In this document: positions 4,428-50,300 of the stretch, in pieces
Layout of the letters: each line of letters begins with the position of its first letter
Position numbering within the stretch: the stretch's first letter is position 1
Assembly: GCF_030028105.1 (NCBI RefSeq)
Contig: NC_092395.1
Location: 21,978,424-22,042,423, forward strand
Reading direction: 5' to 3'
DNA length: 64,000 bases
DNA from: Mobula birostris
Taxonomy: Eukaryota
The notes under the pieces: model-generated
What the model was told of the DNA's origin: nothing
Seen by the model: only the letters and a program-made list of their open reading frames with translations
Database searches by the model: none
Translations under genes and position numbers: made by a program

Positions 4428-4620
4428 AGAGACTACAGAGGCTGGAATCTGGAGCAACCAACAATCTGCTGAAGGAACTCAGCAGGTGGGGCAGCACCTG
4501 AGGGAGGAAATAAATTGCCGATGGTTTGGGTCGAAATCCTGATGCATAACGTCAGCAATTTCTTTCCTCCCTCAGATCCTGCCCGACCCACAGAGTTGCT
4601 CCAGCAGACTGTTATTCCAT
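4428..4620. mobile_element. Penelope-derived foldback insert (older subfamily)
   Basis: Inverted arms AATCTGCTGAAGGAACTCAGCAGG...CCCACAGAGTTGCTCCAGCAGA. Confidence 0.6.
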
Positions 4621-10793: not shown

Positions 10794-12302
10794 ATCAGAA
10801 TCAGAATCAGGTTTATTATCACCGGCATGTGACGTGAAACTTGTTACCTTAGCAGCAGCGGTGCAATGCAATACATAATCTAGCAGAGAGAAATAATGAT
10901 AATAATGATAAATAAACACATAAATCAATTACATATATTGAATAGATTTTTAAAAATGTGCAAAAACAGAAAGACTGTATATTAAAAAAAAGTGAGGTAG
11001 TGTCCAAAGCTTCAATGTCCATTCAGGAATCGGATGGCAGAGGGGGAAAAGCTGTTCCTGAATCGCTGACTGTGTGCCTTCAGGTTTCTGTATCTCCTAC
11101 CTGATGGTAACAGTGAGAAAAGGGCATCCCCTGGGTGCTGGGGATCCTTAATAATGGATGCAAACACGAGGAAATCTGCAGATGCTGGAATTTCAAGCAA
11201 CACACATAAAAATTGCTGGTGAATGCAGCAGGCCAGGCAGCATCAGACACAGCTCCCTAAAGATGTCCTGGGTACTTTGTAGGCTAGTACCCAAGATGGA
11301 GCTGACTAGATTTACACCTTCTGCAGCTTCTTTCCGGCCTGTGCAGTAGCCCCTCCATACCAGACAGTGATGCAGTCTGTCAGAGTGCTTTCCACGGTAC
11401 AACCATAGAAGTTTTTGAGTGTATTTGTTGACATGTCAAATCTCTTCAAACTCCTGATAAAGTATAGCTGCTGTCTTGCTTTCTTTATGACTACATCAAT
11501 ATGTTAGGACCGGGTTAGATCCCCAGAGATCTTGATGCTCAGGAACTTGAAGCCGCTCACTCTCTCCAGTTCTGATCCCTCTCTGAGGATTGGTATGTGC
11601 TCCTTCGTGTTACCCTTCCTGAAGTTTACAATCAGCTCTTTCGTCTTACTAACGTTGAGTGCCAGGTTGTTGCTGCAGCACCACTCTACTGGCTGGCATA
11701 TCTCACTCCTGTACACCCTCTCGTCACCACCTGAGATTCGACCAACAATGACTGTATCGTCAGTAAATTTGTAGATGGTATTTGAGCTATGCCTAGCCAC
11801 ACAGTTATGTGTATACAGAGAGTAGAGCAGTGGGCTAAGCACACACCCCTGAGGTGCGCCAGTGGTGATCGTCAGCGAGGAGGATATGTTATCACCAATC
11901 TGCACAGACTGTGGTCTTCCGGTTAGGAAGTCGAGGATCCAATTGCAGAGGGAGGTACAGAGGCCCAGGTTCTGCAACTTCTCAATCAGGATTGTGGGAA
12001 TGATGGTATTAAATGCTGAGCTATAGTCGATGAACAGCATCCTGACGTAGGTGCTTGTGTTGTGTAGGAGGTCTAAAGCCATGTGGAGAGCCATTAAGAT
12101 TACGTCTGCCATTGACCTATTGTGGCAATAGGCAAGTTGCAATGGGCCCAGGTCCTTGATGAGGCAGAAGTTCAGTCTAGTCATAACCAACCTCTCAAAG
12201 CATTTCATCACTGTCGATGTGAGTGCTACCAGCTGATAGTCATTAAGGCAGCCCACATTATTCTTCTTTGGCACTGGTAGAATTGTTGGCTTTTTGAAGC
12301 AT
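10794..12302 (-). mobile_element. Rex1/Babar-type non-LTR retrotransposon, 5'-truncated, RT region
   Basis: ORF 11504-12415 from CFKK onward: [58 protein letters not shown]; (GATTCT)n tail at about 10794-10810. Confidence 0.85.
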
Positions 12303-12639
12303 GACCCTCGTCCTAGCACTACATCAATGGCCCTGAAGGTCATCGCTCTTCCAATATACAAAAGAGGCCCCTTTTTGATGCTGAAGATTTCTGCCTTTAC
12401 CATCCTTTCAGACAATAAGTTCCAGACCTCATCCAGCCACTCTTCACACTCCCTTTAAGCCTTTTACAAATCACTAAATCTATGCTCTTGGGTTTGATTT
12501 TTTCCCTCTGTCAAAGCCCTCACAAATCTCAATGAAAACCACCCACTGAGTGAAGGAAAATAATCCCAGGCCTTTTTTTCCCCTCATAGTTATTTTTTTT
12601 AGCCTGGAAACAGTACTTCTAGAATAGGAATAGGAAGAA

Positions 12640-21450: not shown

Positions 21451-21769
21451 TCATAGGGCATAAAACAGACTTCACCTGAACTTAGCGCACGTAGTCACAT
21501 CTTGTCAGGCTCAAGTTAGGTAGCGGGCTCTACATTTGCAAGAAATCCTCAGCAGTGCTTGTCCAACCCAGCTATTGTGAGGTTGGAGTAACTCCCTTTA
21601 ATTAAACTTTTGCTCGTTTAGAAGGTAGGTCTGCAAAAATGCTCAAGGGAATTCCCATTTGCCTGGAATTTATGATGTTCTGGTGCCAACCACTGAAGGC
21701 AGATGGAAAAGGAACGAAAGGTTTTGAGGGAAGCTTTAACTGCTCTGATCCTTTCAATTCAACCACATG

Positions 21770-22326
21770 CACTGTGTGGCCACTTTGTTAGCTACCTCTT
21801 GTACCTAACAAAGTAGCCACTGAGTGTATTTTCATGGTCCTCTGCTACTGTCCCATTATCTTCAAGGTTCGACATAGTGTGCATTCAGAGATGCTCTTCC
21901 ATACACCACTGCTGTAATACATGGTTATGTGAGTTACTGCCACCTTCCTGTCAACTTCAAGCTAGTCTGGCCATTTTCCTCTGACCTCTCTCATTAATAA
22001 GGTGCTTTCGCCCACAGAACTGTCGTTCGCTGGATGATTTCTGTTTCCCGCATCATTCTCTATAAATGCTAGAGGTTGTGCATGAAAATCCCAGGAGATC
22101 AGCAGCTTCTGAGATACGCAAACCACCCTGTCAAGCACCAACAATCATTCCAAGGTCAAAGTCACTTAGATCACATTTCTTCCCCATTCTGATGTTTGGT
22201 CTCAATGACAACTGAACCTCTTGACCACGTCTGCATGCTTTTATGCATTGAGTTGCTGCCACATGATTGGCTGATTAAATATTTGCAATAGCAAACAGGC
22301 GTACCTAATAAAGTGGCCACTGAGTG
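21770..22326. mobile_element. Tc1-like non-autonomous element
   Basis: TIR consensus CACTCAGTGGCCACTTTATTAGGTAC at both ends, TA at 22327-22328, plus an extra internal TIR. Confidence 0.8.
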
Positions 22327-23014
22327 TATAATTCAGGAATTATTCTAATATGTACTGAATACATGAATTGTCTATCACGGAGAAAAGCTAGAAATGCCTA
22401 CAAGACCATCACATTTTCATAGACCTATTGCTTGCTCATAGTATTTCAGGGAACACAGAAGTTAGACAGCTGGATGGTCAGTCAGATTTATTTGGATAGA
22501 CAGCATAGTCTTTTTCATTTACTTTAACTTGTGATCTTGTGAACTGCTCAAAAGAGTGAATCATCAAAACAAAACACTGACAACAATAAACCTTTCTCTA
22601 ATGACATCCCAATATATTCACAAATAATACGATGCGGCAAATGTGACAATATGGTTTTTCATTCCCTTTCTGTCACGCTGCATCAAGCCAAGCCTGGGGC
22701 CACAAGAGTGTTCACATCATAGCTCTGGGAATCTTTCCGACTGCAGCTTCTGCGATCATCATTCACCAAGCAAACTAATAGCACTGTGCGTGTCAGTGGA
22801 AGGATCTGTGTCATTGGTGAAAGGAAAGAAGAAAAACATCACAGAGCCCAGCTACAATGAACTAAGGCTTCTCTGATATATAAAAAAAAATCCACATTAT
22901 TTCTGGCCTAATGTCACAGGGGCATTTTACTTAAATATAGAATCTTCACCCCAAAACAGATCACACGGCTATTAATGAAGAAGGCTGTTGGAATTTTACC
23001 CAAGAGGATAACAG

Positions 23015-23260
23015 GTGGCGCGGTCGTGTGGTGGTTAGCGTAATGCTAGTACAGCACCAGCAACCCCAGGCTCACTCCCTGACATCTGTAAGGAGTTTGT
23101 ATGTTCTCCCCAGGACTACGGGGGTTTCCTCCGGGTGCTCTGGTTTCCTCCCACATTCCAAAGATTTACAGGTTAGTAGGTCAATTGGTCACATGGGTTT
23201 AATTGGGCCATGCGTGCTTGTTGGGCTAGAAGGGCCTGTTACTGTGCTGTATCTCCAGAA
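23015..23260 (+). mobile_element. V-SINE
   Basis: GTGGTTAGCG..GGTTTCCTCCGGGTGCTCTGGTTTCCTCCCACATTCCAAAGA. Confidence 0.8.
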
Positions 23261-27930: not shown

Positions 27931-29375
27931 AATGTTCAGGGAATACATGGCGATACTTGTGGATGGTTCACAGCATTACTAATACTTAACACTGAGAGAA
28001 ATAGCACCAGGCAGCTCACGTAGTGGCAGTTGATTTTTTAAATGCTCTTAAACGAAGAAAGAAGGGCTTGTCTGAAAAAGAACATCTTCATCAATGTTGA
28101 AGCGCAGCATCAGCCTAACTATGTGTTTGTTTCTCAGAAGCATAACACAAAACCACAGCCTCCTGGAACAGAACTACGGCTGCTTCCCATTGAGCCATAA
28201 TACTGCTCAAGCTTAATACCATGTCTCTGAACAGAATTCATTGTTGTCCTCTGTCTCTCCCTAACTGAGCTGGTTAGGGATGCTTGAAATGGCTAGTCCA
28301 AGACTAGTTTGTGACAATAGTTGTAGCACTAATTCTGACTGGCTGAAGCTGTTACTGCAGTGAAATATCCATAGCTCAGAAATTTAGAAAACCAACTCTC
28401 TCTGCATGTGGCAGGGATATACTGTAAGCTATGTCCAACTGAATAAAGACGATAGGAATTTGGTGAGTGAAGTAAACATGACACACAACTTCCCACCCAG
28501 GACTGCTCAAGTCCTTTAACGTCTTATCAACCATCATAGCAGTGGCTGCTTAACAGCTCACAGGAATACACTGAGGTTTTGCTGAAAATAAATGTTGCTA
28601 AGAGCTTCTTGAAGGTGCTAAAAAGTAAAAAAAAATTGCTTATTGTTTGTGACAGCATCCAAGTGGAAGTGTCACAATGCACGTCAGCAATGCCAGGTAC
28701 TGTCGCACAAGGTAATCAAGTATTTATGTATCAGCAACAGGAGCTAAGCTTGGAAACCATAGGTCACCTTACAGAATTAGACTTGGGTGGTTTTATGAAC
28801 ATTTAGCAAGACAAAGCTCATCATTGTCAAAGGGGAAAGAGGAGCAGAAGGTTTTATTCTACCAAAGAGCATCTCTTTTCAATTGGCTTTTGATTTTGTC
28901 ATGTTTGCTTAAAAATAATATTGTTCTGTCTGTTCAGTTCTTTTTTCTTTCATCTGAAGGCATAAGTTTCTACCTTTCTATTTCAAGGAGACTTTATTGT
29001 TTTGATTACGTGGTTCTCTCCACATCTGTTTTTCTGTAATCCCACCCACTGTGCTCATCCAATTATTCCCGAATGAAATTCCTACCATTAGCAACCCTGC
29101 CATCAATTACAAAGGCCATATACTTTGGAATTCCCTAAACTCTTTTTCCAATTAGATGCTCTTTAAAACCAAAGGTATGTTTTGACCCAAAACATTGATG
29201 ATCTCTTTGACTCTACAGATGCTGCTTGATGTGCTGAGCTTTTGCTTCAGATTCCAGCATCTAAGTTTCCTGTGTCTCCTTCAAACCACCCTCTACATCA
29301 GAAGCTTTGGTCAGCTGCTTAAATGTATCTTTGAATGGTCCAGTGTAATTTTCATTTGGTTACACTATTGTCAAA

Positions 29376-29980
29376 ATGGTTGTTGTGATGTGTCTAGTGT
29401 GGTAGTGTAGTGGGTTGTGCTTGTCACTCTCACTTTCAGCCTCCACCGCTGGCTAGCAGTCTTGCGAAAAGGAGAGCTGAATGTCTCCCTGCCAGTACAC
29501 AGCCTCTTCGACAGCAAGCTCCATGAAGCGCCTCCTCGCTGGCGACACACGGAAACTGAACTCCTTTCGGACTCAGGCTGAACGACAGAGGACAGGGAGG
29601 AGGTTTGGCCCCTGCACACGTAGCACACAGGCCTGCCGGTGTGTGGATATGCCCTGGTGCTCATGGACCCAGGTTCCTAATTATGGGTAAATAACCCCGC
29701 TGTTTTGTGGGCAGCCTCAGGAGAGACGAAGATTACGGGACAATAAATCCGGAATGGACCCCCTAAGGCGGCTGGATGTCAGTGAACATCCTTCTGACAG
29801 CTCCTGCAGCCAAACTAGTGCCAAACATATTGCTTTATAAGCTTTCCTTTGGATTACACTGATGAGGCCGAGAAGGAGATCTTGACAGCTTGGCAACTCT
29901 GGAGCTCTGTATCTTCTACCCAGGCTTGTGACGATGATCATCATTACCCATTGTCCTTTGAGACAGATGGATGCCAACCA
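29376..29980 (+). mobile_element. Non-coding RTE-type retroelement (SINE-like) with HDV-like ribozyme head
   Basis: TSD ACACTATTGT at 29362-29371 and 29981-29990; GC-rich body with no credible ORF; (CAAC)-type tail. Confidence 0.75.
29388..29586 (+). ncRNA. Degenerate HDV-like self-cleaving ribozyme
   Basis: P3-L3-P3 GCC-TCCTCGCT-GGC (29530-29543). P1' GACACAC (29544-29550) pairs 6/7 with ATGTGTC (29388-29394). GG for P1.1 at 29551-29552, P4 hairpin at 29556-29576, J4/2 GCTGA with candidate catalytic C29578. P2 is poorly paired. Confidence 0.6.
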
Positions 29981-30159
29981 ACACTATTGTAAAAGATGTG
30001 GGGAAACTTTGCTACATTAAATGAATGCAAATAAGTGCAAGCCATCATTATTGCTAGAGCAACTTGAGGTTGTGGGACACTGTAACACAGGGTGTATTTT
30101 TTATAGGGTCTAGTTTTGCCTCTCCACCAGAACCCACAATAGACAAAGAGTTGTACCGC

Positions 30160-31360
30160 ACAGAAATAGACCATTTGGCCAAACATGCCTATGCCGAACT
30201 TTAGACCATCTACACCAAAACCATTTGATCCAATTAAGTCCTTTGCCTTGCCAGTCAAGTGTCTTTCTTAATGTCTCTTAAATGTAGATCTATATCTGAC
30301 CCCACTACTTTCTTTGGCAGCAGGAAACCGATTTCAACAACTCAGTGTGTTAAAAACCTCCCCCTTATCCCTTTTAAAACTCCTTAAATGTGTGTCCTTT
30401 TGTTTTTGCTAACCAAATCGCAGAAAATAATCTTATTTACCTCATTTATCTCATACACACCTATTAGGTCACCCCTCAGCCTCCTGCACTCCAGGAAAAC
30501 AAGCCCATCATATCCAATCTTTCCCCATAACTAAAACCCACCAGTCCAGGCAACATCCTGGTGAATCTCCTCTGCACTCTCTCCAGTGCAGCCACCTACT
30601 TCCTACTGTGTAGAGCCTAAAATTGCTCATAATACTCCAAATGCCGTCTAACCCGTCTTTTGTAAAGTTGCACAACACATCCCACCTTTAAGATTGTATG
30701 CTCCATCATGTGAAGCATACCATCTGCCTGCACCACTGTATTGCCCTGTGTTGCTATTTTCAAGGAACTCTGCACTTGAATCCTTAGATCTCCCTGTTCA
30801 TCAACATGCTATTGTCCTACCATTCTCTTAAAATATCCTACCTCTATTTGACTTCTCAAAATGAATCACCTCAGGCATGTTGAGATTAAATACCATTTTC
30901 CAATGCCTTACCTAACTTTATTCTACAGTAGCCTGAGACAACTTTCCTTACTATCCACAACTCCAGTCTGGAGTGGCATGGTAGCATTCTGGTTAGTACA
31001 AGACTATTACAGTGCTAGTGACCTGGAATCAATTCCCACCACTGTCAATAAGTTTATATGTTTTCCCTATAACTACATGGGTTTCCTCCAGACGGTCCAG
31101 TTTCCTCCCATATTTCAAAGAATGGGTTAATAGGTTAATTGGTCACATGGGTGTAATTGGGTGGCACGGGATCATGAGCCAGTAAAGCCTGTTACTGTGC
31201 TGTATCTCTAAGTAAATAAATAAACAAAATGAAATAATTTTCATATCATCCAGCAAATTACCAAACATTCCTCCTACATTCACGTCCAAGATATTAATGT
31301 ATATCACAAATGACCAGGGTTCCAGCACTGGTTCACCACTAGTCAGAGATTTCCAGTACA
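30160..31360 (-). mobile_element. Degenerate CR1 with a V-SINE inserted at about 30975-31225
   Basis: CR1 3' motifs; VLEPWSFVIYINILD..LDDMKI RT remnant. Confidence 0.65.
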
Positions 31361-46570: not shown

Positions 46571-47364
46571 CACTCGGTGGCTACTTTATTGGGTACACCT
46601 GTACAGCTAATCGTTAATGAAAATATCTAATCAGCTGATCATGTGACAACAACTGAATGTATAAAAGGTCAAGTGTTTCAATTGTTCAGATCAAACATCA
46701 GAATGGGGGAAGAGATGTGATCTAAGTGACTTTAACCATACAATGATGAATGATGTCAGACAGGTAGCTTGAGTACCTCAGAAACTGCTGATCTCCTGGG
46801 ATTTTCATGCACAACAGTCTCTAGAGTTTACAGAGAATGGTGTGAAAAACAAAAAAAGACATCCAGTAACATACATAAAAGTTGCTGGTGAGTGCAGCAG
46901 GCCAGGCAGCATCTATAGGAAGAGGTACAGTTGATGTTTTGGGCTGAGACCCTTCGTCAGGACCAACTGAAAGAAGAGCTAGTAAGAGAATCGACTGTAC
47001 CTCTTCCTAGAGATGCTGCCTGGCCTGCTGTGTTCACCAGCAACTTTTATGTATGTTGCTTGGAATTCCAGCATCTGCAGATTTCCTTGTGTTTGTGTTT
47101 TTACATCCAGTAAGGGCAGTTCTGTGGGTGAAAATGCCTTGTTAATGAGAGAAGTCAGAAGAGAATGGCCAGACTGGTTCAAACTGACAAGAAGGTGACA
47201 GCAACTCTAAATAATCAGTAGTGTGCAGAAGAGCATCTCTGAATGCACAACACCTGAAATATTGAAGTGGATGGGCTACAGCAGCAGAAGACCATGAACA
47301 TGCTGTCCAATCAGTGGGCAGTTTATTAGATACAGGAGGTACCTAATAAAGTGGCCACTGAATG
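46571..47364. mobile_element. Tc1-like non-autonomous element (same family, inverted, interrupted)
   Basis: Both TIRs present; body is the reverse complement of 21770-22326; contains the foldback insert at 46870-47102. Confidence 0.8.
46870..47102. mobile_element. Penelope-derived foldback insert nested in a Tc1-like MITE
   Basis: Perfect 11-bp TSD ACATCCAGTAA (46859-46869 and 47103-47113); inverted arms; minus-strand core CTGACGA-AGGGTCTCAGCCC-AAAA (46928-46964). Confidence 0.8.
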
Positions 47365-50300
47365 TATTTCACATGCTGGTAAATTCCAAATTCTAAATAT
47401 TCTCTGTGTAAAAGTTTCTCTTCTAATACCTTGTTTGATTTATTAGTAACCATTTCTTGTTTGTGGCCCTGAATCATGGAGTCTACAAGTTCAAATGTCT
47501 TTGCTTCTTTGCTCCATATTTTTAAAGGCCTGCTGGGTAACAGGTCAGACTTCTCTTTTCTGGAGAAAAGAGACTGCACGAACTTTTGTGAAGCTTTATT
47601 CTGATACCATCCTTGTAAATCATTGATATCCATTCCCCATTTTTATTGAAAGGTTGATTGTGTCTAGTAATGAAGTATTGCAGAAGCTGGAGAAAATGAA
47701 AACTAAAACTGCTAGAAATAGTCTGCAGGTCAGGCAGCATCTGTGAAGAATGAAATAGAGCTGATGTTTTAAGTTAATAATCTTTTATTAGAGCACCACA
47801 AAGCTGCCTTTTATTCTGTTTGCAACCCCCTAAAACTGTTCTATCTTGCTGCCTTTAAAAAACAAATACCTAAAAACTCTCTTTAAACACCACTTCTTGA
47901 CCAATTTATGGTCACCCTTCCTAATTTTGTTGTCATTGTCATCTCTTGTTTTTCGCTCTTTGAGAAATGCAATTATTGTTGATAATAGAGAGAGGTTAGA
48001 GTGACACAGGAAAGAACGGAGAGAAAAACTAACTGATGAAGTATTTTGGTCTATCACCGTAAAGTAAAAACAGCAGGGAAATAGAAACAATGAAAAAGGC
48101 TTAAGACACTGTAAGAGAGCAAAGCAGAGGGCGAAAGGGAGGGAGGGAGAAGAAGCTAGAGTGTGAGGGGCGAGTGAGCGTGATACCTCTTTCAAATTGC
48201 ACTTGAGTTCCACTGTATATCTGACAAGATCGAAAAGCACCTGATTTTCACTTTAGTTAAACTCAGGCAAAGAAAATCAATCAATTCCCATACGCGCATC
48301 AGGCGAGTATCACAGTTTGAAACTCCATCCGACAGAGACAATGTGCTGAAAGCACAGTGCCTGTCCTGCTGAAGGGTGGAATTTGGAGTGATGCCAGAAA
48401 GTCTTAGTCAAAGAGAAGTGCGTTTGATTTGGAACAGTTGAGGAAATGAAAAAAACACATCTTTTCAGGTAATGTTGATTGCTGTGATGCCAGGAGGGGA
48501 AGGGATGGGAGAGAATTTTTCGGAATGTGTAGCCCATATGGTCCAGAATTAGTCAAAGTGGTTCAAATAGCCATGAGCATAATCTGAATCTTGTTGTAAT
48601 CATAACCTTGTTGCCACATTTTCCTGAAACATCAACTTTTTATTCCTCTCCATCAATGCTGCCTGGCCTTCTGAAGTCCAGGCAAAAGGAGCACAGAAGC
48701 CTAAAGGCACACACTCAGCAATTCAGGAACAGCTTCTTCCCCTCTGCCATCTGATTCCTAAATGGACTTTGAAGCCAAGAACACCACCTCACTTTTATTA
48801 CTTCTGTTTTGCACTATTTAATATCCAGATGTCTACTTAATGTAATTGATTAAGTAATTTTTTCTATATTATCATATATTGCATTGCACTGCTGCCTCTG
48901 AGTTAACAAATTTCATGACATATGTCAGTAATATTAAACCTGATTCTGATTCCTCCAGCATTTTGTGTGTGTTACTCTGGATTTTCCAGCATCTGCAGAT
49001 TCTCCTGTGTTAACACACCTATCCGTGTCTAATGTGAATTGCAGCCAGGGATGCATTGTGATTTCATCTCTGCTTTAGCAAGCTGAGTTATTCTTTGGAG
49101 GACAATTCTCTGCACAATTCTTTTCTGCAGATTTGAAGAGCAAACTGCAAACAAGAGTAACAAAAGGAGCAGAAATTAATTGGTTTTGTCCACTCTATTT
49201 GTGTTAATTGAAAGGTCAATTGATACTTATTTCCAGTACAGTTGTCAAAAGATGGAGGGAAATTGGGATGAAGAGAGACAAAGGGACATTTGGACACAAA
49301 TCTTGAGCCTCCATTTGATGTCAGAGTAAACTATGTATTACCTTATCAATGGTTTGCAGCAATGACATAACATCACTTCAAAAGTTCATTGCAGTGCTTT
49401 ATGGAACAATGCATCATTAGGATGGTTGTCAAGTGCCTCACTAAAACCACTGCTAAAAATCCATGCAAAATTACTTAAGATGATGGGAATTGTGTGTCAC
49501 TCAGGATATATCAAGGCATAGAATGACACAAAATTGGCCAAATTTGCCCAACCTATTCAGGTTGGTGTTTATGCTCCAAGTTACCCACCTCCTACATTGC
49601 TTTTGCTAACCCTGCCACTGTATCTTCCGTTACTTTCTCCGTCCCATTTGACTACCTTGCCCTCGAATGCAATTCTTCTGTTCACCTCACTGTTCCATGT
49701 GGTCCATAAATAAAACACTCTAGATGCCAGAGATTTGAAAGAAAAACAGCAGGAGAGAGAAAAAGAGATAATGTTTTAGATTAATGACCTTTCTTCAGAG
49801 CACCAGTCTGAAACATTAAGTATTTTCCTTACCACAGATGCTGCCTGACTTGCTGAGCACCCCAAATGGTATTTAGTTCTGCATTCTAATAATCTATAAA
49901 TAAATATTCTAGGTTTATGACTATTTGCTATGGACTCTCATACAAGTGAAACATATCCATTGCATGTTAGTACCTCTGTAGTCTGATTTCCATCTTTTCC
50001 CTTTTCTAAAGCAGCCACCTCCCACCAGCCTCTTCAATGAAGACTGTAATAACCTCTGTCTTGGTACATATACATGTATCTTCTCCAGTGCCTTCATGTT
50101 TCTTTGCAATGCACAGTATTCAGATTACGGCCTGTTCCCTTAAATGCTCTGGCCATTTCTCCCACCACCATCCAGTCATGAAATATCCTGCCCAAAATAA
50201 GAATTCTGTAGCAGAGACTTATTGTGAAATTCATTGCATTTGAACACCATCAGCCTCTTGGAACAGGCCTAATTAATTATCAAGTACCTTACCTCAAAAG

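What the first reader, a model, noticed from the sequence alone, without database searches (positions are those of the whole stretch)
29376..29980. Non-coding retroelement headed by an HDV-like ribozyme
Seen: a ~600-bp ORF-less insert bounded by a TSD (ACACTATTGT, 29362-29371 and 29981-29990) with a CAAC-type tail. It contains GCCTCCTCGCTGGCG (29530-29544), identical to the P3-L3-P3 segment of the genomic HDV ribozyme as recalled. This is followed in the correct order by a 7-nt P1' (GACACAC), GG (P1.1), a P4 hairpin (CTGA..TCC-TTTC-GGA..TCAG) and GCTGA (candidate catalytic C29578). The partner of P1' is ATGTGTC at 29388-29394, about 12 nt from the element's 5' boundary, which is where self-cleavage would define a transcript 5' end; J1/2 would be ~130 nt. 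Known: HDV-like ribozymes process the 5' ends of R2, RTE and L1Tc retrotransposons. Inference: a non-autonomous, ribozyme-processed SINE-like family mobilised by RTE machinery with no Pol III promoter. This copy looks decayed (G1 to A; only 2 of 5 P2 pairs) and is antisense to CELF5.
Basis: partly seen in the sequence, partly recalled or inferred. Interest (0 to 1): 0.85.

Follow-up and report, generated by a model that had tools for sequence, protein, structure and literature searches.

The report
Decayed ribozyme-headed retroelement copy
This is an old, broken copy of a very common short jumping element of rays that probably carries a hepatitis-delta-like self-cutting RNA at its front end; such elements are already known, so it is a good new example and not a new principle.

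Summary
A roughly 610-base, ORF-less, TSD-flanked insert with a CCAACCAAC tail lies at 29369/72-29982, antisense to CELF-family RRM exons. It is one copy of a very abundant repeat: 3204, 4308 and 5262 contigs were laid in three species, and the same insertion is present in all three.

The 15-mer at 29530-29544 occurs in a printed hepatitis delta ribozyme construct. The features after it (7 nt, GG, a 7-bp hairpin, C-N-GAA) co-occur at only 16 of 127,840 window positions. The HDV-like core is therefore real.

- **P1 site:** copies carry 29369-29387, so cleavage at 29388 cannot make the family's 5' end. The letters at the family's own 5' end (...GGTGTC, or GTGTGTC in a subgroup) are complementary to P1'.
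- **P2:** it is broken in this copy. The two family-majority letters (T at 29521, T at 29584) each restore a pair, giving 8 of 10 (background 5.9%).

Against the ribozyme, four Rfam scans gave no HDV-like hit, and I could obtain no alignment of copies, so covariation is untested.

Verdict: probably (about 0.55) a decayed copy of a ribozyme-headed non-autonomous retroelement with a roughly 146-nt J1/2 insert. It is a new member of a known kind. The scan had already noted ribozyme-headed elements elsewhere in this genome.

The parts
29362..29371 (+). 5' copy of the target-site duplication ACACTATTGT. Its last 3 letters (TGT) also match the family sequence, so the junction is ambiguous by 3 nt.
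   Evidence: alignments of other copies start at 29369
29369..29982 (+). The retroelement copy, about 610 nt, + strand sense. It lacks about 4 letters of the family's 5' end.
   Evidence: flanking bins have depth 3-18 against hundreds to tens of thousands inside. Loose ends cluster at 29369/29374 and at 29980/29982.
29369..29372 (+). Remnant (TGTC) of the proposed true P1 5' strand at the element's 5' end. It makes 4 pairs with 29544-29547 in this copy. Family copies carry ...GGTGTC (5 pairs) or GTGTGTC (7 pairs).
   Evidence: table 7 loose-end consensus
29388..29394 (+). It lies inside the inherited part of the element, so it is not the 5'-end-defining site.
29373..29518 (+). J1/2 insert, about 146 nt. 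It contains a 10-bp stem (29435-44 with 29471-81, A29475 bulged) and a second core-like string at 29439-53. Relative to many copies it has an 8-nt deletion after 29483/4.
   Evidence: table 4, table 7
29519..29528 (+). P2 5' strand. C29521 is T in the family majority.
   Evidence: table 3
29530..29543 (+). P3 (29530-32), L3 TCCTCGCT (29533-40) and P3' (29541-43). With G29544 these are the 15 letters shared with the hepatitis delta ribozyme.
29544..29552 (+). P1' GACACAC (29544-50), followed by GG (29551-52) that pairs with C29535/C29534 as P1.1.
29556..29576 (+). P4 hairpin: 4 + 3 bp with loop TTTC.
29577..29582 (+). J4/2 GCTGAA with candidate catalytic C29578.
   Evidence: Role inferred by position relative to the HDV fold.
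29583..29591 (+). P2 3' strand. G29584 is T in the family majority.
   Evidence: table 3
29592..29973 (+). Non-coding 3' body. The best-kept block among copies is 29774-29855. It presumably holds the part recognised by the partner reverse transcriptase (inferred).
   Evidence: table 2
29974..29982 (+). Tail CCAACCAAC. In other copies the sequence continues CAAC-type repeats (CAACCAAC, CAACTAAC, CAACCATC).
   Evidence: table 7
29981..29990 (+). 3' copy of the target-site duplication. It overlaps the last 2 tail letters.

Best explanation
The insert is an ancient, slightly 5'-truncated and mutated copy of an abundant, roughly 610-nt non-coding non-LTR retroelement family of rays. The first ~225 nt of the family encode an HDV-like self-cleaving ribozyme with a large (~146-nt) insert in J1/2.

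Proposed working, inferred except where marked:
1. The element has no promoter of its own and is transcribed inside longer host transcripts.
2. The element's first 5-7 nt (GTGTC or GTGTGTC) pair with GACACAC (29544-50) to form P1.
3. The J1/2 insert folds back on itself.
4. P2 (29519-28 with 29583-91), P3/L3 (29530-43; shown, identical to HDV), P1.1 (shown), P4 (shown) and J4/2 with C29578 complete the double pseudoknot.
5. The RNA is cut just 5' of P1, which fixes the element's 5' end.
6. A partner LINE reverse transcriptase recognises the 3' body and CAAC-repeat tail and copies the RNA into a new site, making a ~10-bp duplication (shown for this copy).

This copy is dead. Only 4 P1 pairs are left, there are two extra P2 mismatches, and the J1/2 insert has an 8-nt deletion. 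It lies on the strand opposite to the CELF gene, so it cannot cut that pre-mRNA.
For: 1. Family and age. 3204, 4308 and 5262 contigs of three species were laid on the element at 80% likeness or more. Flanking bins have depth 3-18; bins inside the element have hundreds to tens of thousands. Contigs bridge the 5' junction in X1 (0 differences), X5 (7 in 322) and X9 (22 in 349), and the 3' junction in X1 and X9. The insertion therefore predates the split of these species.
2. Core. The 15 letters are shared with a printed hepatitis delta ribozyme. P3, P1.1 and P4 are all paired. The GG, hairpin and C(N)GAA combination occurs at 16 of 127,840 window positions.
3. P2. In the canonical register (5' strand ending 1 nt before P3, 3' strand starting right after GAA) this copy has 6 of 10 pairs. 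With the two majority letters table 3 it has 8 of 10. None of 20 slid registers exceeds 6. Eight or more pairs occur at 5.9% of 20,000 random places.
4. P1. Letters carried by other copies just upstream of 29369 end in ...TTGG in all three species (120, 164 and 193 contigs), giving GGTGTC. A second group of 35 X1 contigs ends in GTGTGTC before 29374, the exact complement of P1' (table 7).
5. Precedent. Active R2 ribozymes tolerate a ~250-nt J1/2 loop, a P1 as short as 4 bp and mismatches in P2 (PMC3774820, passages and section 16). Ribozyme-plus-3'-end non-autonomous elements exist (PMC3414825 abstract).
Against: - No Rfam HDV-like family (or any ribozyme family) matches the element at E up to 10 in four scans of 3.5 kb, 64 kb, 281 nt and 99 nt.
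- P2 support is weak: p is about 0.06 with majority letters and 0.42 for this copy.
- T29521 equally restores a small competing hairpin at 29518-29.
- The P1 evidence rests on 30-letter loose-end consensuses with overall agreement of only 0.40-0.5. The 5' head is GT-rich, so complements of an ACACAC string are easy to find. In the main group only 5 of 7 P1 pairs form.
- The J1/2 insert and the whole 244-nt region are no more stable than shuffles (z +0.12 and +0.61). Agam-2-type large ribozymes need a stable J1/2 helix and a long P2 (PMC4908430 passages).
- No alignment of copies could be obtained, so there is no covariation test, no 5'-end histogram and no activity data.
- Contigs cannot show RNA ends. 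In the presumed RNA run X15 the family sits inside longer contigs.
Confidence: 0.55

Rival explanations
1. Fossil core. The family carries an HDV-like ribozyme core by descent, for example from the 5' end of a ribozyme-headed LINE of this genome. In this family the core is internal and no longer a working ribozyme, and the element's 5' end is made some other way.
For: The core is far beyond chance, yet the closing helices are weak: P2 p is about 0.06 and P1 is ambiguous. There is no Rfam hit. The J1/2 insert is not unusually stable. Some copies lack the core altogether, seen as rare deletion joints such as 29484 to 29545 tables 5 and 5c. Earlier unchecked notes report ribozyme-headed RTE LINEs in this genome.
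Against: Both majority letters that differ from this copy within the P2 strands restore pairs. The family's terminal letters are complementary to P1'. The core block 29528-29609 is among the best-kept parts of the family (table 2).
Confidence: 0.25
2. Chance resemblance. This is an ordinary non-coding retroposon whose sequence happens to contain a 15-mer of the HDV ribozyme.
For: Short exact matches do arise by chance. The 20-mer from the core hit one unrelated GC-rich metagenome contig. A loose helix-only descriptor finds 29 candidates in 380 nt and about 55 per strand in the window. Rfam is silent.
Against: Beyond the 15-mer, GG, P1.1, the P4 hairpin and C(N)GAA all sit in the right order and spacing, which happens at 16 of 127,840 positions. 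P2 improves with majority letters.
Confidence: 0.1
3. P1 is ATGTGTC at 29388-94 and cleavage there defines the transcript's 5' end, about 12 nt inside the element.
For: 6 of 7 pairs with P1'. The 124 nt between it and P2 fold with their two ends paired in the MFE structure.
Against: Copies in all three species align from 29369-29376 onward (tables 7, 8), so the letters upstream of 29388 are inherited. No cluster of ends at 29387/8 is among the best-supported loose ends shown; every cluster shown for X1 has 22 contigs or more. No majority G at 29388 is among the rows shown. One variant contig has unrelated letters at this site (table 5c).
Confidence: 0.05

Closest known systems
R2 SIDEs (short internally deleted elements) of Drosophila
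   Same: Non-autonomous non-LTR elements made of a 5' HDV-like ribozyme plus a LINE 3' end. They are co-transcribed and self-cleaved, then copied by the LINE's machinery (PMC3414825 abstract).
   Different: R2 SIDEs are rare and insert site-specifically in rDNA. This family is dispersed and very abundant, and its LINE parent has not been identified here.
R2 retrotransposon ribozymes with large J1/2 loops (silkmoth, fruit fly)
   Same: HDV-like fold with a dispensable J1/2 loop of up to about 250 nt, a P1 of 4-7 bp and mismatches tolerated in P2 (PMC3774820).
   Different: Those were shown to cleave. Here activity is untested and P2 is weaker.
drz-Agam-2 HDV-like ribozymes of Anopheles
   Same: Natural large HDV-like ribozymes with an added domain in J1/2 (PMC4908430 passages). 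Their link to RTE elements is recalled from Ruminski et al. 2011, which is not held.
   Different: Agam-2 has a stable P1.2 helix and a 12-bp P2. Here the insert is no more stable than shuffles and P2 has at most 8 interrupted pairs.
L1Tc/NARTc Pr77 ribozyme of Trypanosoma cruzi
   Same: An HDV-like ribozyme at the 5' end shared by a LINE and its non-autonomous partner (PMC3383444 and PMC3185411, abstract starts in the listing).
   Different: That is a compact 77-nt element that doubles as a promoter, in a protist host.
Genomic hepatitis delta virus ribozyme
   Same: P3-L3-P3' and the first P1' letter are identical over 15 nt. The order P1'-GG-P4-C..GAA-P2' is the same.
   Different: HDV has a short J1/2 and a perfect P2. 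Here J1/2 is about 146 nt, J4/2 has one extra letter, and the helix sequences differ.

Membership tests
HDV-like self-cleaving ribozyme | P3 (3 bp) closing an L3 loop whose two C pair with GG after P1' (P1.1) | tested here: met
   3/3 and 2/2 Watson-Crick pairs. The letters are identical to a printed HDV ribozyme.
HDV-like self-cleaving ribozyme | P1 of about 6-7 bp whose 5' strand begins at the cleavage site | tested here: inconclusive
   This copy has 4 pairs at its 5' end and 6 of 7 at the internal site 29388-94. The family loose-end consensus gives 5 pairs (main group) or 7 pairs (35 contigs) at the element's end.
HDV-like self-cleaving ribozyme | P2 of at least about 5 bp joining the strand before P3 to the strand after J4/2 | tested here: inconclusive
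   6 of 10 pairs in this copy (background 42%). With the two family-majority letters, 8 of 10 (background 5.9%; 0 of 20 slid registers reach it).
HDV-like self-cleaving ribozyme | P4 hairpin after J1/4, then J4/2 carrying the catalytic C (C-N-R-A as I recall the descriptor) | tested here: met
   7-bp P4 at 29556-76; J4/2 is GCTGAA with C29578-T-G-A. The motif is recalled and comes from no call.
HDV-like self-cleaving ribozyme | Match to a curated covariance model (Rfam HDV_ribozyme, CPEB3, drz-Agam and related) | tested here: not met
   no such hit on the element at E up to 10. The models do not expect a ~146-nt J1/2, and this copy is decayed.
HDV-like self-cleaving ribozyme | Mg2+-dependent self-cleavage abolished by mutating the catalytic C | not testable with these tools
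   bench assay needed
Non-autonomous non-LTR retroelement (SIDE-like) | Target-site duplication, short-repeat 3' tail, no ORF, many dispersed copies | tested here: met
   TSD; tail; no coding signal; thousands of contigs in three species
   No related LINE is in the window. The only RT fragment, 11504-12415 (RVT_1), shares nothing with the element. No eukaryotic genome collection was available.
Classical Pol III SINE | Head derived from tRNA, 5S or 7SL with A and B boxes | tested here: not met
   ARAGORN found 0 genes. Rfam gave no tRNA, 5S or 7SL hit at E up to 10 in 281 nt. There is one A-box-like 11-mer with 1 mismatch at 29403-13, against 33 in the window and 24 expected. No B box with up to 2 mismatches lies within 190 nt downstream on the + strand. 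Box motifs are recalled.

The most novel reading that the evidence does not exclude
A highly successful vertebrate retroelement family, with thousands of copies shared by several ray species, makes its 5' end with an HDV-like ribozyme. Its P3-L3 active-site strand is letter-for-letter that of human hepatitis delta virus. It works across a ~146-nt J1/2 insert that itself contains a second, decoy-like copy of the core string. If true, it would give a cellular vertebrate relative of the delta ribozyme core. That would bear on where the delta ribozyme came from, and on how much insertion the fold tolerates.
Probability: 0.12. Interest if true: 0.7.

Novelty: new member of a known kind. Interest (0 to 1): 0.4.

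Why it matters
HDV-like ribozymes that trim the 5' ends of non-LTR retrotransposons and of their non-autonomous derivatives are established for R2 and its SIDEs and for L1Tc/NARTc. That RTE elements also carry them is my recollection and was not checked here. Earlier follow-ups of this scan already reported ribozyme-headed LINE derivatives in this genome.

What this case would add if confirmed:
- an abundant, multi-species family in cartilaginous fish;
- a core identical to the HDV active-site strand;
- one of the larger J1/2 inserts.

In the held library only 2 papers contain both 'HDV-like' and 'shark', and neither title concerns such elements (listing only). The family may therefore be undescribed. 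The principle is not new.

Tried and rejected
- **Deltavirus-like rod.** The whole element folds no better than shuffles on either strand (z +0.59 and -0.98, 20 shuffles each). Rejected.
- **Other copies in the window.** blastn with word size 7 and nhmmer found none, so no alignment could be built.
- **Copies via spurious ORFs.** The search for homologous proteins with the 97-aa antisense ORF gave 4 word-sharing candidates, none significant.
- **Copies in public collections.** The 23-mer had 0 hits in viral contigs. The 20-mer had 1 hit in metagenome contigs (L001). By eye it reads as unrelated GC-rich coding sequence and I took it as chance.
- **The search of earlier findings by sequence.** Blank twice.
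- **Helix-only HDV descriptors of my own.** They are too unspecific to use as evidence: 29 candidates in 380 nt and 56 and 55 hits per strand in the window.
- **Internal tandem duplication of the core (29439-53 against 29530-44).** The local alignment score was reached by 25 of 500 shuffles. Not established.
- **Alternative P2, CCTCT(TCG) 29503-10 with 29583-91.** Rejected. It lies 19 nt from P3, and the majority T at 29584 breaks its extension (hand reading).
- **Pol III head.** Not found.
- **Near-match of the core at 11871-84 on the minus strand.** It lies inside a reverse-transcriptase ORF. Chance.
- **Ruminski et al. 2011.** Not held. Supplements were not opened; Table S1 of PMC4908430 could bear on how long an unstructured J1/2 may be.

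Full report
**What is there**

- ACACTATTGT stands at 29362-71 and again at 29981-90. The repeat finder gives this as the only direct-repeat family in 29300-30060 and extends it to 14 nt at 93%.
- The insert ends in CCAACCAAC (29974-82).
- The longest ORFs are 97, 86 and 69 aa. Five of five ORFs tested have no Pfam hit above cut-off.
- Two exons of a split RRM_1 domain with CELF-type motifs lie on the minus strand at 20755-20567 and 19717-19415. The + strand insert is therefore antisense to a CELF-family gene. I did not test which paralogue it is, and I searched the exons apart without joining them.

**It is one copy of a very abundant, old family**

The window holds no second copy (blastn, nhmmer). 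The one read-laying run (contigs of four runs, 80% likeness) laid 3204, 4308 and 5262 contigs of three coded species, plus 76 contigs of a presumed RNA run, on 29077-30280.
- Flanking bins have summed depth 3-18. Bins inside the element have hundreds to tens of thousands. The tool warns that this is not a copy number.
- Homology to other copies stops at 29369/29374 on the left (120+35, 164 and 193 contigs) and at 29980/29982 on the right. There the other copies continue with CAAC-type repeats.
- Contigs that bridge the 5' junction exist in X1 (0 differences), X5 (7 in 322) and X9 (22 in 349). Contigs that bridge the 3' junction exist in X1 and X9. This very insertion is therefore shared by the three species and is old.
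- Earlier notes of the scan call the genome a manta ray. I did not check that.

**The HDV-like core is real**

- The 15 letters 29530-44 occur in 27 papers of the library. In the one passage I read they sit inside a construct labelled hepatitis delta ribozyme.
- verifies P3 (3/3), L3 TCCTCGCT, P1.1 (2/2), P1' GACACAC, J1/4 AAA, a 7-bp P4 and J4/2 GCTGAA with C29578.
- I scored every position of the window on both strands for GG at +7/8, a following hairpin of at least 7 bp, and C(N)GAA right after it. That gives 16 of 127,840 positions, the real one included.
- The rule was written after seeing the site, so the true odds are less extreme. Together with the 15-mer, chance is still unlikely.

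But copies in all three species align from 29369-29376 onward (tables 7, 8). The letters upstream of 29388 are therefore inherited, and a cut at 29388 would lose them at each round of copying. No cluster of ends at 29387/8 is among the best-supported loose ends. No majority G at 29388 is among the 40 rows shown; 154 rows were hidden.

**A better P1**

- Just upstream of 29369 the other copies carry letters ending in ...TTGG in all three species, so the family reads ...GGTGTC before the A-run.
- In a second group of 35 X1 contigs the letters before 29374 end in GTGTGTC, the exact complement of P1' (table 7).
- Overall agreement of these 30-letter consensuses is 0.40-0.5, which fits only some 4-8 conserved terminal letters.
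- So the family's own 5' end coincides, within a letter or two, with a 5-7-nt complement of P1'. This is what a 5'-end-defining ribozyme predicts.
- The evidence is noisy and the head is GT-rich. This copy keeps only TGTC (4 pairs).

**P2**

In the canonical register this copy has 6 of 10 pairs, which is not above background (42% of random places). Only two family-majority letters differ from this copy inside the P2 strands.
- T at 29521: 772 of 831 depth in X1, 2050 of 2258 in X5, 5080 of 5327 in X9.
- T at 29584: 5043 of 5160, 11841 of 12142, 40494 of 41785 (table 3).

Each restores a Watson-Crick pair, giving 8 of 10 with one bulge. None of 20 slid registers exceeds 6, and 5.9% of 20,000 random places reach 8. 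T29521 also completes a small competing hairpin at 29518-29.

**J1/2**

With the terminal P1, J1/2 is about 146 nt. It contains a 10-bp stem (29435-44 with 29471-81) and a second core-like string at 29439-53. As a whole it is no more stable than shuffles (z +0.12; the 244-nt region gives +0.61).
- Large J1/2 loops are compatible with activity in R2. A ~250-nt loop could be removed, P1 can be as short as 4 bp, and P2 mismatches are common (PMC3774820).
- Agam-2-type ribozymes depend on a stable J1/2 helix and a 12-bp P2 (PMC4908430).

**Evidence against**

Four Rfam scans at E up to 10 (3.5 kb, 64 kb, 281 nt, 99 nt) give no HDV-like or other ribozyme hit on the element. I could obtain no alignment of copies: the ORF trick, viral and metagenome scans all failed. 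Covariation, a 5'-end histogram and activity are all untested. Contigs cannot show RNA ends.

**Verdict**

- Most likely (0.55): a decayed copy of a ribozyme-headed, promoter-less, non-autonomous non-LTR retroelement.
- Next (0.25): the same family with only a fossil core.
- Chance resemblance: 0.10.

No Pol III head is detectable. The RTE partner is untested.

The kind is known: R2 SIDEs (PMC3414825) and L1Tc/NARTc (listing). Earlier follow-ups of this scan report ribozyme-headed LINE derivatives elsewhere in this genome (unchecked). I therefore rate it a new member of a known kind, of moderate interest.

Noticed in passing
window 29439-29453: A second string resembling the HDV P3-L3-P3' core (GCCTCCACCGCTGGC) lies inside the J1/2 insert. 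It forms the 5' strand of a 10-bp stem with 29471-81. Alignment of the two halves is not significant (25 of 500 shuffles reach the score).
   Followed up: partly
window 29159-29281 and 30143-30183: The flanks of the insert contain other repeated DNA. Summed contig depth rises to 350 (X1) and 3175 (X9) in 29200-29240, and to 50-310 in 30143-30183, against 3-18 nearby (table 2).
   Followed up: no
window 22684-22748 (+): Weak match to the Rfam CPEB3 ribozyme model: 18.3 bits against a gathering score of 35, E 4.2. Probably chance. The sequence was read but not analysed.
   Followed up: no
window 11504-12415 (-): A 303-aa ORF with a reverse-transcriptase domain (RVT_1, E 6e-24), so a LINE fragment. 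It holds a chance near-match (2 mismatches) to the HDV-like core string at 11871-84.
   Followed up: partly
window 20755-20567 and 19717-19415 (-): Two exons that together encode one RRM (Pfam RRM_1 positions 1-40 and 40-63) with CELF-like motifs. This is the host gene of the intron that holds the insert.
   Followed up: partly
window 4468-4605; 21765-21831; 47303-47369: Palindromic stretches that hit miRNA-precursor models on both strands, well below gathering scores (MIR533 47.9 bits; mir-9256 34 and 28 bits). They look like foldback or MITE hairpins, and the last two may be copies of one repeat.
   Followed up: no
window about 23017-23260 (+): By eye, a different SINE-like repeat with a tRNA-like start and a GGTTTCCTCCCACA-type core. 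It is unrelated to the element studied.
   Followed up: no
L001 8358-8377: The 20-letter core string occurs once in JGI metagenome contigs, inside GC-rich sequence that reads as an unrelated coding region. It shows that exact 20-mers can recur by chance in very large collections.
   Followed up: partly
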